Assembly: GCA_964304625.1 (NCBI GenBank)
Contig: OZ199839.1
Coordinates: forward strand, 1,376,221-1,440,220
Reading direction: 5' to 3'
DNA length: 64,000 bases
DNA from: Kudoa neothunni
Taxonomy: Eukaryota; Animalia; Cnidaria
Part shown: one piece after another, positions 18,545 to 34,045 of the stretch
How positions within the stretch are numbered: position 1 is the first letter of the stretch
How the letters are laid out: each line of letters begins with the position of its first letter
Program-made: the position numbers and the translations under genes
The notes under the pieces: model-generated
Database searches by the model: none
The model's input: only the letters and a program-made list of their open reading frames with translations
Told to the model about the DNA's origin: nothing

Positions 18545-18700
18545 CAGGGGTCGACACCCTTTTCGGCCCAAAAAGCCACAAATATATCATAACATATACA
18601 GTAGGTAACTGATTTTCCGTAATCCCCCGGTGAACATGGAAAAGTTAGTGAGGAATGCGCCAGTGACGTATATTTCCGCAACTTTCTGCGGGTGCAAAAA
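18545..18700 (+). mobile_element. hAT MITE end with a Tigger-type MITE end inserted at 18600
   Basis: CTCTATAA|CAGGGGTCGACACCCTTTT, then TA|CAGTAGGTAACTGATTTTCCGTAATCCC, similar to the right end of the 27601-28191 element. Confidence 0.55.
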
Positions 18701-20040: not shown

Positions 20041-23000
20041 ATGACTGTAAAACTAGACAGAATCGAAGTTGAAAATTTCAAGTCATACCACGGGAAACAC
20101 GTGATAGGTCCATTCAAAGGTTTCACATCAGTGATTGGTCCCAATGGGTGTGGTAAATCTAATTTGATGGACGCAATAAGTTTTGTGCTTGGTGACACGG
20201 CGTCAAACCTGCGAGTCACATCTATGACAGGAGTGATACACAGTTGTTCGACAGCGGAACACGCGGGCGTATCTGCATTTTTTATCAATTCCACCGAAAC
20301 TCGCGTCTTTGAAAGAACGTATATCGCTGGCGCAGTTTAATTCACATTAGTTCCTATATTATCCATATTATCCTTATACGTATAGGATTCGAAAAAATGG
20401 AAAATGTGAATATCGTCTAAACCACCAAACAGTCACCGCCAACTTCTATCAGGAAAATTTGGAAGAATTAGGAATTGTGTTGAAAGCTCGGAATTTTCTA
20501 GTTTTACAAGTTGAATTATATTCGAGTCTATAGCTCAAAGTTTAACGAATTTTAAATAGGGCGGGATTGAATCGATTGCTTTACAGAATGCTAAGGAACG
20601 CGCTCGAATGTTTGATCGTATAAGTGGGTAAGTGTGTCTTTATTTTCGACGTAATCTTCTAATTTTCTATACCGCATTAGTTCTTATAGACTAAAAGAGA
20701 AATACGACCAATTGAAAGAAACGTTCCAAAAAACCTTAGAGCATGCTCACCAAGTGATTTCGTTGAAAAGAGTAATTGATTTATGTTGTATCCAATTTAT
20801 TCTACAATATATTTAATTAAGGGAATTGTAGCCGAAAAGAACCTAGCGAAATACGAGAAAGAAGAAGCTCAGAAATATCAAGATTATTCTAATTCGCTGG
20901 TAACCATAATTTATTAGTAGTATCTGTACAATTGTTTATAACAATGCGTTTTTATATAATAGAAATTGATGACAATGGAGCTGTATCTTTTCAAGTTGTA
21001 TCACATTGACTTGGAAGTCGAGAGATATCGAACGAGCATTATTGAAGATAAATCACAGATCGCACCCACTGTAATCTTATAACAATTTATTATTAAAAAC
21101 ACGATTTTCTGTAGTTGAAAGATTTGGAACGTTTATGCAAAGAAATATCGACCAAAAAGAACGAGTACATCAGCTGTTCGAAGGAGAAAACAGCTGTTCA
21201 ATTAGAATTACAAGAGAGCACGCGGCAAAGTGAGAGTGTACGAACAAAAATTTTGAAATGGAACACATGTGTGAAAATCTAAGCAAAATATGCCAAGAAA
21301 TGAAGTATTTGCTTGCTTTAGATTGATTGATTGATTTGTTATCGTAATAATATAATATAATATAATTTAATAATAGTTCTAAGTTATCTCAGCTAAATAT
21401 TGAATATTCCGCTGGTGTGAAAGAGTGTGAGTTGCTTGAAAAGGAACTAGCCTACACTGAGAAATGTCGTGAAAACTATAACGACGAGCATTTTGTTAAA
21501 GCGTCAATTTATGAGGATTATTCTCAGTCGGCCGATGTGAATAACCTCAATCACACTGCAGTTTATAGTTAACAATTTTAGTTGGAATATCAGCAACTCA
21601 TTGAGTCGTACAACAAAGATAATGCCGCCTCATTGGAAGAGTTGAATAAAGTTGGTCGAGATATGACTGTTTAAAGTAATACGCATGTATCTTTATAGTT
21701 GAATGAGAAGTATTCGATTATTGATAAAAATCATTCTGACATAAAACAAAAAATCAACTCCAATCTTAAGTTAATTGACTATTTGGCGAGTAAACTGTAT
21801 GTATACGTTATCAGAATAATATGAGTAATGTATTCTTCTAACATTAAGAGTTGGTATAAATGAAAAGAAACAAAAGGTTGAACAATTTATAAGGTTGCTA
21901 ACATAATTTGTTGTCATATGGGCATTCTTTTTTCCATGGTACATAACATAAGTCGGTTATTGGGTTATTTAAATTTGGATTCGACCTGAATTTTGTCGTG
22001 TCCAATAGAGAAATATTATTTATTGCATCGTTGGGTTTAATTGATTAAGTAATAATTTTTCATAAAAAGAAATGCCAAAGTTTGCTTAGATTTTTGTGTG
22101 TGAATAAATATAAATTGTTTTAATTGATGAGGTTCGAGTAAACGTTGGCCCAATAACATCCTTCCATTGATGACATCCATGGAAGATCGATTGTCCACTA
22201 TGACGGCATAACCATAAATGATTTGAATTATTGAGCGTGTTTAGTGAGAGCTTGGAAAAAATCTCAGCACTAGAAAATAATATCGAATCTAAAAGAGCGG
22301 AACATTCGTAACAAGAATTGATAGTTTGATTGTGATAACATGCGATAGTACCGACTCCATCAATCTTATAAAATCCCAACAAGAATTGGATATCGTGAAC
22401 GAAGAGATATCCAGCGCCAAATTTTCGATAAACTCTCAAGTTCAAAACGAACGAAATTTTGAGTTGACTATGTCACTAAAGAAGAATTTTGTTGGTGTGT
22501 TAGGGAGATTAGTGGATTTGTGCCAACCTTCACATAAAAAGTGAAACAGTTTGGTGTGGATTGTTGAAGTGTAAACACCATTGCTATTAGATACTCGATA
22601 GCTATCACCAAGGTCACTCAAAAATACATGGATTCATTTGTGGTTGACACTGAGATGACGGCGCGTGAATGTATCCAGTTTTTAAAAGATAGGGTAATTA
22701 GGTTGGTTAGTTGCTTTGATTATTGTTATTGTACAGCATGAACCACCTTGTCTCTTTCTACCCGTTGATTCACTCACCAGCGTTACAATTAATGAAAAGT
22801 ATCGTGAACTTGGAGGCACCTCCAAATTGCTTTTTGATGTGGTCAAATACGAACTACCCCAAATGAAAAAAATCGTCGAATTTGTGTGTGGAAATACGAT
22901 AGTTTGTGAGTCCGAGGAGGAGGCTAAACGCGTTGCTTTCCATAGTCAAAGAGAACGCAGAAAAGTAGTCACTTTAGAGGGCACCCTTTTTCTTAAATCT

Positions 23001-26000
23001 GGAGTTATTTCCGGTGGTGTAGCGTAAGGCGTTATATATTAGCGAATTAGCAAATTATCAAATCGGGAAGTTACTATTGGCCTCAATAAATTTGTAAAAA
23101 ATAATTGAATGTAGGAGATTTTAAAATATTTAATTTGTAAGGTTTTCTGTGGGTGAGAAATATTGAGATTAAATTTGTAATGGCGCATGTTTTATATACT
23201 ACGGGAGATGACAGGTCGTTCGTAAATTTTTGAAGATGTACGCGCTTTATTGTATCAAATCACACAGGGTAGAAGGAGTTGATAATTAATAAAATTTATT
23301 TGTTGTAAAAATATTCTATAATTTTGGTATTTTCAGTGTTTTTATAATTATTTAATGTACTTCGTTTTCAATATCATTAAGTGTATTCGTATTTTTTCGA
23401 CCCATGCTCGATAAGGTATTGCTTAAGTTTGCCTAAATAAGATAGGACAGTTTTAGAAATTGATATTTTCATTTTTTTATATTTGAAATAATAAATATCC
23501 CTTTTGATTTCTATTTCTGTGATATCGTCTGAATATTAATTAACTTTTATGATATTTTCATGTTCATTGGTAAGATTGTCATGTCCGATAGCCACCACGT
23601 TCGATACTATTTCATCATTGTTCTGTTCATTTATCTCATTAAAAAAAGTTGTATTCTAATTTTTAATTTTCGTTTTTATCCAAATTATCAGTAATAATAG
23701 AAATTTTTTTTGCGATTAGATTTCGCTATAACAAAAGCAATTAAAAAAAATAGTGGATTTAGTCATTGCAATCAAAAAAGTGCATTCAAAATATTAGGAG
23801 ATACAGGTTCCGTCGAAGTGTTGGTGGAAGAAATGTGGAGTTTTATCGTATATACTTTTTAGTGAAATTTAAACGATTATATTATGCCCTCATCTATGGG
23901 TCGGAGTGCTTTTGGGAAGAAAAATTAGTTTAATATTTGATTATTCCAATTTTACATGACAGTTAGTCTTGTCTAAAAACAAAAAATCATTTCTTTATTG
24001 TTTGTAAAGTATGTCATATTTTCTAAGATCAAACTGAGCTTAAATGCGCCAATTATATCATCCTTTTTATTAAAAAACAAAACAAGGTGGATATGGATGA
24101 TGCATTACAAAGTTTTGTAGTCCTTGATTTCACCTCTGCTTTTGACTGACTGTCAAAATAATTGATTATTTTTTATTCTTCGGAAATAGATCTAACATTT
24201 TTTTGTATTTTTATCTTCAATCAATAGTTTGTACAAAAAACTGGACGTTTATGTTTATTCATCCGTAATGTTACGAACCGCGAGTCAGTCTATCAAAATA
24301 AGGAAAAATACAAAAATTTGATTATTGATTATTTGAAAGCTAATATTTTCCCCCACTTAATGTGTTTATTCGAATGTGTATTTTGAGTTAAAATTTAATA
24401 ATTCATTTTCATTATAATTTCTAAGTTTTACATATTTTCAAAAGTTACGAACCACCCGTCATCGACTGTCTTCTAAGAGTAAAATTAACGTGTCAACAGC
24501 TTGTCATATTTAATTATTTTGTACCGCCGCTCGCTCTTTAAACCATAAAAAATCAAATGCAGTCGGTAATCGATTTTGCAAACTTTTTGTTAAGTTATTT
24601 AATTGTTATCATAATTCTAATGTTTCTAAAATTTATATAAACAAATATATTCAACTCAAAGTTAATTTACATTTGAAGAAATTATTTGAAATATCTGACT
24701 GTAAGCGATGCAAAATATATAATTGTGTATCACGCGGTTAACCAATTTTACACACTTTTCATGGAACCGATGGGATTGTGGAAAGTCGATTGTCTATTGT
24801 ATAAAGGATTCTTAAAAAATAAGTCTGTATATAGCTTGTAAGGGAGAGTTACGATGGCTGAAAATTATAATCACACGCGCATTGGACATGCCATTTGGGG
24901 TTAAAATTCGTCATATCTGATTATTGTTGGTTGTCATTTCACTCTATGGACAGAAAATAATTTAATATTACAAATTCTGAAAAATTACATCCGTATATAG
25001 CTTACGAGTAAAAGTGTTTTGATTCAAAACAGGCCGTGCGCGTGCGTGAATTCATATATAAATAATGATATAATTTATGAATTGAGGTTAAAATTGACAT
25101 GGCCACAACTCGCAAAAATCATAATGTGCATATCTCTTACAAACCTGTTGTAGGACATTTAGCTGGTTATATCTCATTAAACTTGGGATTATTTATTTAA
25201 AATAATATTTTGCTCTTTTTAATGATAGATGTATAACGCACAAGAATATATTATGAATATTAAAACACAGATCGGAGGGTATAAATTCTTGTATAATGTT
25301 TATTTTTATGTGAATGACCACTAATCTAATTTAAAAAAATATTGGAAATGTGAAAACTCCGCTAGTAAAGGACGTCTTATCATTTCACTTTTGTCAAATA
25401 ACTTTCTTTCAAGAAAAATGCGACCATAACCACGTTGTTACGTTTTATGATATGAATCGGGCTACTATTAACGATACAATTAAAAATGTATATATCAAAA
25501 TAATATTCAGCTAGCGGGATCTGTCTACACGCAACTTGAAATATTTTTATCAACTATAAACGCATATAATTCCGGTAAAGACCATTTTAAAAGGAAAATT
25601 TCAAATTAATATCAGAAAACAGTGACAAATTTTATTCTCAATTTTATTTAAATTTTATCTGGGATCAATTCCTAAAAAACATAATTAAACATGATAATAA
25701 TTTCAAATCGTAATGTTATTTTGCTGTAAAACTGTCTTTAATTATTACATGTCGTTGAGCGGCTAAAATTACCATGACAATAGATTGTCATGTTTAACCT
25801 TCTAAATAAAATGGGGTAGCATTCTACCCAAGTGAATTTTGCCAACAATATTATAGTGTATAAATAGAATATAACTCCTCTCCACTTATTGTGATCTTAT
25901 TTCTTTGTGAAAGCTTTCAGAAAAATGAGTAGAAATTTTTGTTCGTCATATATCAAAAAAGTTAGTGTAAGAACACCTTCCAAACAAAATTATTCAAAAT

Positions 26001-29000
26001 ATTGATACATGTGATTTTTAACAATTTACGTAAATTCTATTGAGTAAATAATGAATAAATAACGAAACACCCTATTCGCAATGTCGATATAAGCATGTCG
26101 TTCTCTTTTGAATACAACGATAGCTCACCAATCTCTTATTCTCTCATTGTTTTTATTCCAATTATTCGAAATAATATGACCTTTCGTCAGGTTGCTTATT
26201 TCTACACTGTAGAGAGCCTCCAAAAACGTAATTGGAAACTATTAACCAATATTCTTAGTTTCGTATTAAAGAGGGCATTAAAAAAACATACGATATAATT
26301 GTTCAATATTTTGACAAGCTTTGCGTTTTCTGCGCAGTTTTACACTGCGTTGTTTAAAATAGAATAAATTAATTGGCAGCTGTTACACAATTTGAATTGG
26401 GTGTTACTTGAATTAAATGTTACAACTAAAAAACCACAGAAATACACCTATAAATACAATCGTACATCACAGAATTGTACCAACATTAATTTGCGCGCGC
26501 GTGTGCAGAATATAACTTTGATAATTGGTCATTTATTCAAAATTTACTCTATGGATTTTCCTCGCATTTTGTCAGTCTATGCTGAATTTTATTTGGAGGG
26601 TGTAAATTTTTCAGCTACTTAGAAGGTCAATAATTTTGTATCATGGCCTCTCCGCTTTTGATTTCCAAAATAATTATATGTAACATATTCTAAAAATTAA
26701 ACCTATATATGGTTGGTAAGTAAGAGTTGCTGTGATTAAAAAATGTCACACACATACAATTTAGGATTAAAATTCGGTTTTCAAATAATCTCTGCCAAAA
26801 TTTAATCTCCTGTGCGTAATTTTCACAATCGATATTTTTTCTTATGCTTGCATGTAGCGTTCCTAAATAAACTATAGTTGATTCTAATAAATTAACATAA
26901 TGAATGAATGAGAAATTGGAGTTAAAGTTTTACACGCGCATTCGCACCGGGCAAATAAGATTAAATTTAAAACGGTCACTAGTAACAACCTTTAAATCAT
27001 TTTACTTTATCTCGAAGCATTTCATTTAAAAAATTTACATAATTAGGGATGTTAGCGCTAAATCTTCGAAATGGGATCAAAACCAACTCAACTCATTAAA
27101 ATCCAAACGAGACATTCTCAACACTAAGATTCGCTCCCTTCAACCATCCACCTCGTCTCATTCATCTACTATTCATCAATTAGGAACCGAATTGAGTCAG
27201 CTGAAAAATCGAGTAGAAATGTCAAGACAACAGCTTAAAAATTGTGTAATCTCATAATTGGTTCTTCTTGTGCCTAATTATCCAAAAGGATAATGTTTTA
27301 ATTGACGACATACAACAACAAATCAGCTCTGCAACGAAAGAGAACCAAATTCTTCAAGTAAGTCATCCATACAACAATCTACAATAATTATTGTTGTTAG
27401 AATGAATTGTTTGAGGCTGACCAACAGAAAGCCAAGACTGAACCTCAAGTAGATCACATGACTAAGAGATTAAATTTTGCCAAAGAAGAGGTTTTATTTG
27501 TTATTGTTTCTAATGTGGTTTATAATTTGTTCGACAGCATTTTAGCGAATTCAACAATAAATACAACTATGAAACCATTCTGTAAATATCAAACAATATA
27601 CAGTAGGTAATCGAGTTTCCGTACTTCTACTTGTTCCTCTCTTATACATAATTATCCGAGCCAAAACTATTTTTCCAACTTTAGACAGTTTATTTTATGA
27701 AACTGAAATTAACAACTACAAAAAAGTGACTTATAAAGAGGTTTTTTATAAAAAATAGGGATTTTCGTAGTTTTTCGGCTACAACCTTAATTTTCATAAT
27801 CCTTTGTTTTGGTTAATTACATCCACGATAACATTGAAAATAATGTAGCATAATTCTTGTATTTTTCAAAAAATTCAGCAAATTAACTACTTTCTCTCAA
27901 CAAGCGAATAATTTATTTTTAAAAGTCCAACTACAAAGGTATTTCGATTAAAAATCACGTATTCGAAAATAATAGCGATCCAAATACACAGCCTCCAGAT
28001 TTTCTTCGAGTTATGTTAAAAAGATAAGTATCCTTTGAAAAATTAATAATTTTGAATCTTATTATAATATTACTTCAATACAAAATATTTTAACCACCCA
28101 CCAAAAACTACGTAAAATCAGTCAGTCAGTGATGCGTTTTCAGGGACTTTCTCCAGTCCTAAGGGGATTACCGAAAATCGATTACCTACTGTATTACGTT
28201 AAATTGAACAAAATACATAGTTGGTTAATAGGGAATTTGAAAAGACCTATGTGGTTTTTCGATCCACTATAGAAGCTCAAAAATTGAAATTTGATTTGGA
28301 GATAGAAAAATTAGTAACTAAAGTATGTTCGCGCATGGGCGAATTTATATGATGGATGGGATTTTTAAAGCGATGATAATCACTAAATTTCGTTAGATCC
28401 AGACCATACAAAATTCGTCACTTCTATCTCAGATTAAATCTCTCAATGAGAATCTTACTAGTAAAACCGTCACGCTAGAGAAAACTCGCGAGGATCTTAC
28501 ATCCTCGAAAACCACATTGAATAACTTGATTCTCACTCAACAGGCGCTAAATGAGAACTTGAACAATTTCGTTAAGCTTACGAATAATTTGGTATTTTTA
28601 ACACAATTGTTCTGAACAATATTATTTGAATAATCATTTGTCACTAATCGAAGGATACACAATTAAGGCTATTAACGTCCGAAAATATTGAAAAGAAAAA
28701 ATTAGCGGAAACCCTTAAAAGAAATTCTCTAAGAAACGTACCAATTTAAATTTCCATTGATAATTTATTGTTACTATAGAGAGATAATTTGAGTGAGATT
28801 ATCGCTACGAAACGCCATATTTTAAAAAATGCCAAGGTTTAGTCTTAATTGTTGAATATTTGGTTGGAATTTTGGGATAGATTGAGAATATTGCCATACC
28901 GACAACAGCAACAACGATGACCGACCAATCAGATAATTATGTTGAACAATTCGAACAACTTGATCTTGACTTGACGGATATAACGCCGCATACCATTTTG

Positions 29001-33822: not shown

Positions 33823-34045
33823 TAGGGAATGCAATTTTCGACGTTTATTATGCGCGCCGAATATCGTGACCTTTTATTCTGCAATAAAAAAGTCCTAACT
33901 TCAAAAATAATAGGATCAATTTGTGACTATTTTTTATTATAATCCCGCTGCAATTTACACATAAAAAGAGAATAATGTAGAAGACGTTAAAAACTTGTTC
34001 ATTAGAATTGGCGCGCATAATAAACGTCGAAAACTACGATCCCTA
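33823..34045. mobile_element. hAT MITE (223 bp, TAGGG termini)
   Basis: About 37-bp imperfect TIR TAGGGA..TTTTCGACGTTTATTATGCGCGCC, 8-bp TSD ATTATAAC. Confidence 0.9.

What the first reader, a model, noticed from the sequence alone, without database searches (positions are those of the whole stretch)
21909..22208. Unrecognised ~300-nt structured RNA inside an SMC1 intron, with a C/D-type kink-turn motif
Seen: intron 21894-22244 (351 nt, against about 50 nt for its neighbours) has no TIR or TSD but folds as a rod. Helices are TGTTGTCATA-TGGGCA (21909-24) with TGTCCA-C-TATGACGGCA (22192-208); TTTTCCATGG with CCATGGAAGA; GTTATTGGGTTA (21956-67) with TGGCCCAATAAC (22146-57); ATTCGACCT with AGGTTCGAGT; and an apical GAGAAATATTATTTA (22008-22) with TAAGTAATAATTTTTC (22046-61). 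All ~9 non-Watson-Crick positions in these helices are G-U on the + strand and none is A-C, whereas a decaying DNA inverted repeat should give both about equally. CTGA (21986-89) lies opposite TGATGA (22125-30), closed by ATT/AAT, the geometry of a D'/C' box K-turn bound by Snu13/15.5K (established). A UGUGUGUG tract, as in some C/D scaRNAs, is in the apical part. Terminal C/D boxes and SRP, U3 and RNase P/MRP hallmarks were not found. Inference: a selected intron-encoded ncRNA or a cis splicing/editing element of a possibly new class.
Basis: partly seen in the sequence, partly recalled or inferred. Interest (0 to 1): 0.85.

Follow-up and report, generated by a model that had tools for sequence, protein, structure and literature searches.

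The report
Unassigned folded RNA in parasite intron
One intron of the cohesin gene SMC1 in a tuna parasite (very probably the myxozoan Kudoa neothunni) carries a single-copy 300-base insert that folds unusually well as RNA and matches no known RNA family, but nothing yet shows that it is expressed or conserved, so it may be a new intron-hosted RNA or the remains of an old insertion.

Summary
The structure is real. Intron 21894-22244 is an ordinary 51-nt intron (15+36 nt flanks) holding a 300-nt insert, 21909-22208. The insert folds far better than shuffles on the sense strand (z -5.1, antisense -2.3) and ranks 2nd of 1682 genomic windows. It is single-copy and has no Rfam match. SRP, RNase P, U1, U2, U3 and U6 RNAs are encoded elsewhere in the genome.

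Three corrections. The favoured fold is a cross (basal rod plus three hairpins); the K-turn rod is 9 kcal/mol worse. The CUGA/UGAUGA pair lacks K-turn flanking stems, and there are no terminal C/D boxes. The G-U bias (8:0) falls from p 0.004 to 0.036 once intronic strand skew is counted.

The same intron in the only relative reachable (distant) is 34 nt and unstructured. RNA runs gave no test.

Best reading (0.4): an orphan intron-hosted structured RNA shaped like U90 scaRNA but not a member. Rivals: decayed insertion (0.3), splicing zipper (0.2). One post-hoc lead: part of the insert is antisense to both flanking exons at junction spacing. The scan had not reported this element elsewhere.

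The parts
21894..22244 (+). SMC1 intron, 351 nt, GT..AG, phase 2
   Evidence: Frame is kept across it; orthologous intron at the same site and phase is 34 nt in L011 1783-1816
21894..21908 (+). 5' flank with the 5' splice site, 15 nt
   Evidence: Outside the stable fold
21909..22208 (+). 300-nt structured insert, ends TG..CA, no convincing target-site duplication (TAATT / TAACC)
   Evidence: z -5.05 sense, -2.26 antisense; 2nd of 1682 windows; single copy
21909..21939 (+). 5' strand of basal helix P1a/P1b, pairs with 22177-22208
   Evidence: 24 Watson-Crick, 4 G-U, 3 pyrimidine mismatches, bulged C22198; pair probabilities mostly above 0.95
22177..22208 (+). 3' strand of basal helix P1a/P1b
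21940..21955 (+). 5' side of a 16x19-nt internal loop (other side 22158-22176, which holds a second UGAUGA at 22168-73)
   Evidence: Only weak pairs predicted; motif census
21956..21964 (+). P1c, 9 Watson-Crick pairs with 22149-22157, closes the four-way junction
21975..22005 (+). Hairpin A; CUGA 21986-89 lies in its loop
   Evidence: z -3.8 sense, -3.3 antisense
22008..22061 (+). Hairpin B, A/U-rich
   Evidence: z -1.6, not significant alone; pair probabilities about 0.8
22074..22149 (+). Hairpin C; holds the UG tract 22095-22102 and UGAUGA 22125-30
   Evidence: z -4.0 sense, -1.2 antisense
22083..22095 (+). Segment antisense (12 of 13) to the downstream exon at 22257-22269
   Evidence: post-hoc
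22109..22119 (+). Segment antisense (11 of 11) to the end of the upstream exon at 21881-21891
   Evidence: post-hoc
22161..22185 (+). Local alternative hairpin that competes with P1b
22209..22244 (+). 3' flank, 36 nt, with candidate branch points and the 3' splice site
   Evidence: 22209-22219 predicted unpaired; branch point position is inferred, not shown

Best explanation
The insert is an intron-hosted structured non-coding RNA that is selected as RNA on the sense strand. Shown: an ordinary-sized intron (51 nt of flanks) carries a single-copy 300-nt segment that is predicted to fold into a cross (long basal rod plus three hairpins). Inferred: it is transcribed with SMC1, released by splicing and debranching, and trimmed by exonucleases to about 21909-22208, where the 31-position terminal duplex protects both ends in place of C/D or H/ACA proteins. 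It would then act as a nuclear scaffold RNA. It arrived in this intron after the split from the distant relative, as intronic guide RNAs often do (established knowledge). No target or protein partner was identified.
For: Sense-strand z -5.05 vs -2.26; 2nd of 1682 windows, and the only better one is a hAT MITE. Two inner hairpins are significant on their own, hairpin C on the sense strand only. In helices bounded by Watson-Crick pairs, 8 G-U to 0 A-C (p 0.004 at 1:1, 0.036 at the intronic 2:1), whereas the MITE at 33823-34045 shows 4 to 4. No second copy by BLAST, terminal pattern or covariance model. The fold starts 15 nt after the 5' splice site and stops 36 nt before the 3' site. Size, intronic site and cross shape resemble U90 (PMC4041459).
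Against: No expression data. Not conserved in the SMC1 introns of the one relative. No C/D or H/ACA signature and no guide. The basal arms align as a gapped inverted repeat of about 56 nt with TG..CA ends. The target window was cut at its best boundaries, the background windows on a 100-nt grid, which favours it. The genome is about 46% repeats (PMC12239612), so relics have a high prior.
Confidence: 0.4

Rival explanations
1. Neutral relic of a DNA insertion (extinct MITE, foldback element or solo LTR) in a 51-nt intron. The rod is the decayed terminal inverted repeat; the G-U excess comes from the sense-strand T>A and G>C skew of introns.
For: Flanks add up to the modal intron length (median 49 nt, PMC12239612); arms are a gapped inverted repeat with TG..CA ends; the same gene has a mariner-like MITE in another intron (27601-28191); skew explains a 2:1 bias; an earlier look-alike in this genome was reported as transposon ends (s1-682527, not checked here).
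Against: No relatives in the genome (the tool warns these are lower bounds); target-site duplication only 3 of 5; inner hairpins A and C are not part of the terminal repeat; 8:0 G-U to A-C against 4:4 in a true MITE.
Confidence: 0.3
2. Cis-acting splicing zipper. An insertion is kept folded by selection because the basal rod brings the 5' splice site back to within normal distance of the branch point; no separate RNA product matters.
For: Effective length is 51 nt; the fold avoids both splice signals; duplex energy of the intron ends -58.7 kcal/mol; zipper stems are common and poorly conserved in sequence in yeast (PMC12350175).
Against: The two other long SMC1 introns (about 4.0 kb and 0.85 kb) have much weaker end pairing (-25.6, -20.8), so this organism apparently splices long introns without one. 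The yeast geometric rule (42-85 nt of linker, stem ending 20 nt or more before the branch point) is probably not met. A zipper needs no inner hairpins.
Confidence: 0.2
3. A divergent or decaying box C/D scaRNA of the U90 (SCARNA7) type, with CUGA and UGAUGA as D' and C'.
For: Intronic, 300 nt, cross-shaped; D'-like then C'-like order; a short UG/AU tract in hairpin C could form alternating U-A and G-U pairs.
Against: No terminal C or D box; K-turn stems absent; no Rfam SCARNA hit at E up to 10; no guide to U1, U2, U6, 5.8S, 28S or the 3' third of 18S next to a D-like box. U4, U5 and the 5' two thirds of 18S were not tested.
Confidence: 0.05
4. Junction-antisense regulator. 22083-22119 pairs with both flanking exons, bridging them in the pre-mRNA or, after excision, binding its own spliced SMC1 mRNA.
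For: 11/11 and 12/13 pairs with 13 nt between them against 14 nt across the junction; score reached by 0 of 12317 shuffles and 4 of 1715 genomic 60-mers.
Against: Noticed after the fact; A/U-rich helices (-9.8 and -8.9 kcal/mol) compete with hairpin C (-19.4); the middle 13 nt do not pair; another junction of the same gene scores 19.5 against 21.5 (approximate boundaries).
Confidence: 0.05

Closest known systems
U90 / SCARNA7 and mgU2-47 long box C/D scaRNAs (PMC4041459)
   Same: Intron-encoded, about 300-330 nt, predicted cross-shaped fold with three hairpins, a short GU-rich tract
   Different: No terminal C/D boxes, no guide to U1 or U2, GU tract only 8 nt (20-40 nt in vertebrate U90 and mgU2-47) and in the long right hairpin, no Rfam match
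Yeast intron zipper stems (PMC12350175)
   Same: [quoted passage not shown]
   Different: Much longer, carries three further hairpins, linker probably shorter than the yeast minimum; other long introns of the gene lack one
Stable intronic sequence RNAs and excised linear intron RNAs (PMC4621838, PMC11460701; abstracts only)
   Same: Structured intron-derived RNA of about 300 nt without snoRNA boxes
   Different: These are defined by measured stability, which could not be tested here
MITEs, foldback elements, solo LTRs
   Same: About 300 bp, terminal inverted repeat, TG..CA ends, insertion into a normal-sized intron
   Different: Single copy, no clear target-site duplication, strand-biased mismatches, inner multibranch fold

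Membership tests
Box C/D snoRNA or scaRNA | Box C (RUGAUGA) near the 5' end and box D (CUGA) near the 3' end forming a terminal K-turn | tested here: not met
   No RUGAUGA; UGAUGA only at 22125 and 22168, CUGA only at 21986; termini are Watson-Crick paired
Box C/D snoRNA or scaRNA | Internal C'/D' motif with K-turn geometry | tested here: inconclusive
   Core pairs fit, flanking stems do not; that fold is 9 kcal/mol above the minimum; C'/D' motifs are often degenerate and protein binding cannot be modelled
Box C/D snoRNA or scaRNA | 10-21 nt guide to rRNA or snRNA ending next to D or D' | tested here: not met
   None against U1, U2, U6, 5.8S, 28S, 3' third of 18S; U4, U5 and the rest of 18S not tested
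Long C/D scaRNA (U90 type) | Terminal stem of consecutive G-U/U-G wobble pairs from a 20-40 nt GU repeat | tested here: not met
   8-nt UG tract; at best 5 alternating U-A and G-U pairs, not in the minimum-energy fold
Box H/ACA RNA, composite U85-type scaRNA, U17/snR30 | Hairpin-H-hairpin-ACA with a pocket 14-16 nt from the box; m1 and m2 motifs for U17 | tested here: not met
   ANANNA and ACA strings occur but ACA 22156 lies inside P1c, no ACA follows the basal helix, no pocket at the right distance; motif definitions from own knowledge
Telomerase RNA | Template complementary to the telomere repeat | tested here: not met
   Telomere is (TTTAGG)n; the intron holds no CCUAAA template
SRP, RNase P, U1, U2, U3, U6 RNAs | Match to the family model | tested here: not met
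   No hit here; each found elsewhere; no pairwise similarity to SRP, RNase P, U1, U2, U3
MITE or solo LTR | Dispersed copies | tested here: not met
   searches give lower bounds
MITE or solo LTR | Terminal inverted repeats | tested here: inconclusive
   Gapped inverted arms of about 56 nt, ends TG..CA
MITE or solo LTR | Target-site duplication | tested here: not met
   Best case TAATT vs TAACC, 3 of 5, within chance in A/T-rich DNA
Stable intronic RNA | Accumulates as a discrete RNA after splicing | not testable with these tools
   Three RNA runs under the same species label held no reads of this gene
tRNA or tRNA-derived SINE | Cloverleaf, A and B boxes, T-run terminator | tested here: not met
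   ARAGORN at lowered threshold finds none; only loose A- and B-box-like strings at 22082 and 22131, no terminator

The most novel reading that the evidence does not exclude
The intron encodes a box-less, duplex-protected, cross-shaped RNA of a kind not described so far, possibly one that switches to pair across its own exon-exon junction and so tunes SMC1 splicing or mRNA. The probability given is for a truly new functional class; the junction-pairing mechanism alone is about 0.05.
Probability: 0.15. Interest if true: 0.8.

Novelty: new variant of a known kind. Interest (0 to 1): 0.4.

Why it matters
Myxozoans have the most reduced animal gene sets, and the paper search found no study of their small RNAs. 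A 300-nt RNA kept by such a parasite outside every Rfam family would be either a lineage-specific invention or an unrecognisably diverged ancient RNA. It is cheap to test by aligning one intron across existing Kudoa assemblies. If it is a relic or a zipper, it is ordinary.

Tried and rejected
Rfam at gathering and E up to 10: only chance hits. SRP, RNase P, U3, U1, U2, U6: found elsewhere. Telomerase RNA: no template. Hammerhead ribozyme (UGAUGA ... GAA at 22168-22184): core and stem I do not fit (own knowledge of the consensus). tRNA or SINE: rejected. Terminal pattern search: 254 hits against 200 for the control; the repeat families among them are unrelated. Covariance model from the single sequence: no paralogue, nothing in the relative's SMC1 contigs. 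Close relatives: three protein searches, the representative search, one protein scan and one pattern scan of metagenomes, and two exact look-ups gave only sample SRR31175926. RNA reads: no test. A genome search for SCARNA7 failed for technical reasons. A wider genomic background could not be fetched. The 28S rows are against the wrong strand and were ignored; one search has the right strand.

Full report
Organism and gene. The assembly has 40.26 Mb in three chromosomes and an 18.2-kb contig with mitochondrial features, with one (TTTAGG)n end. This matches Kudoa neothunni as described in PMC12239612: 40.2 Mb, N50 12.0 Mb, three chromosomes, one TAAACC telomere, median intron 49 nt, 45.6% repeats. 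The gene is SMC1 (starts at 20041; best hits are SMC1). The intron 21894-22244 keeps the reading frame. Contigs of the source sample cross both ends of the insert, so it is not an assembly join; this is the same sample and not independent support.

The observation. The intron folds at z -3.73 on the sense strand and -1.77 on the other; the core 21909-22208 at -5.05 and -2.26. Among 1682 windows of 300 nt from about 170 kb of this genome it ranks second. That ranking favours it slightly, because its boundaries were optimal. The one better window is a hAT-type MITE at 33823-34045 with an 8-bp duplication. The flanks outside the fold are 15 and 36 nt, together 51 nt, so this is a normal intron plus a 300-nt insert.

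The fold. The basal rod is as described: 31 positions with 24 Watson-Crick and 4 G-U pairs, a 16x19-nt loop, then 9 Watson-Crick pairs. Above it the ensemble prefers three hairpins, A 21975-22005, B 22008-22061 and C 22074-22149. A and C are significant alone (z -3.8 and -4.0), C on the sense strand only; these z values are for stretches chosen after folding. In the favoured fold CUGA is in the loop of A and UGAUGA is inside C. In the K-turn register the four core positions fit, but neither flanking stem forms. Both strings are common at this base composition, and a second UGAUGA lies at 22168.

The G-U argument. In helices bounded by Watson-Crick pairs there are 8 G-U, 0 A-C and 5 other mismatches. 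Against 1:1 this is p 0.004. Short SMC1 introns, however, have T>A and G>C on the sense strand, giving about 2:1, and against that p is 0.036. The MITE control gives 4 to 4. A gapped strand-neutral alignment that runs through the loops and flanks gives 14 to 7. The bias therefore supports selection on RNA, but moderately.

Copy number and identity. BLAST, a terminal pattern and a covariance model built from the single sequence find nothing else in the genome; the tool warns that these are lower bounds. Rfam gives nothing. SRP, RNase P, U3, U2, U1 and U6 are encoded elsewhere, and the insert resembles none of the five compared. There is no telomerase template. Terminal C/D boxes, an H/ACA arrangement and guides to U1, U2, U6, 5.8S, 28S and the 3' third of 18S are absent. 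The closest look-alike is U90, a 330-nt intronic cross-shaped C/D scaRNA (PMC4041459), but its defining boxes, guide and long wobble stem are not met.

Conservation. Only one relative could be reached, Logan sample SRR31175926 (L011, L070): 22% G+C, SMC1 exons 64-66% identical in protein, probably a distant myxozoan (inference). Its intron at the same site and phase is 34 nt, and neither contig matches the model. So the insert is not ancient at this position. At that distance the result cannot separate a young relic from an RNA that moved between introns. Close Kudoa species were not available. Three RNA runs held no reads of the gene.

Cis role. The rod would restore a normal 5' splice site to branch point distance, as yeast zipper stems do (PMC12350175). 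But the other two long introns of this gene, about 4.0 and 0.85 kb, pair their ends far more weakly, so a zipper does not seem required in this organism.

A post-hoc lead. 22109-22119 is complementary to the last part of the upstream exon (21881-21891, 11 of 11), and 22083-22095 to the downstream exon (22257-22269, 12 of 13). They are 13 nt apart, against 14 nt across the splice junction. The joint score was reached by 0 of 12317 shuffles but by 4 of 1715 real 60-mers, and another junction of the gene came close. The helices are weak and compete with hairpin C. Allowing for having noticed it afterwards, I put it near the edge of chance. The exons were compared one by one; a joined spliced model was left out.

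Verdict. The structure is real, single-copy and unassigned. An intron-hosted RNA selected for its fold is the most likely reading (0.4), ahead of a decayed insertion (0.3) and a splicing zipper (0.2). Processing, stability and function are all inferred. The K-turn claim should be dropped unless binding is shown. Interest 0.4: one alignment across existing Kudoa genomes would settle most of it.

Noticed in passing
window 33823-34045: hAT-type MITE (TAGGG..CCCTA ends, 8-bp duplication ATTATAAC); the best-folding window of the background, with symmetric G-T and A-C mismatches (4 and 4).
   Followed up: yes
window 27601-28191: Mariner-like MITE (TA flanks, terminal repeats of about 24 bp starting CAGTAGGTAA) inside an 853-nt SMC1 intron; a related end lies at 18599.
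   Followed up: partly
window 23025-27046: About 4.0-kb intron right after the SMC1 hinge exon, in a gene whose other introns are mostly 30-70 nt.
   Followed up: partly
L062 (G000:C2:5424600-5434500): Next to 5.8S and 28S only the 3' third of 18S rRNA (model positions 1158-1823) is present; the 5' part was not found in the following 7.7 kb. Only one 28S match was returned for the genome. May be an assembly break or collapse.
   Followed up: no
L067 (G000:C2:670702-671375): Two clearly different U1 snRNA genes about 350 bp apart in divergent orientation (110 and 90 bits), with differing 5' ends.
   Followed up: no
   Followed up: partly
G000:C4 (L005, L009, L010): 18.2-kb contig, 44% G+C, with very divergent mitochondrial-type genes and no tRNA found by ARAGORN.
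   Followed up: no
L011 and L070: SMC1 of an unnamed, very A/T-rich (22% G+C) probable myxozoan in SRR31175926, with intron positions shared with this gene.
   Followed up: partly
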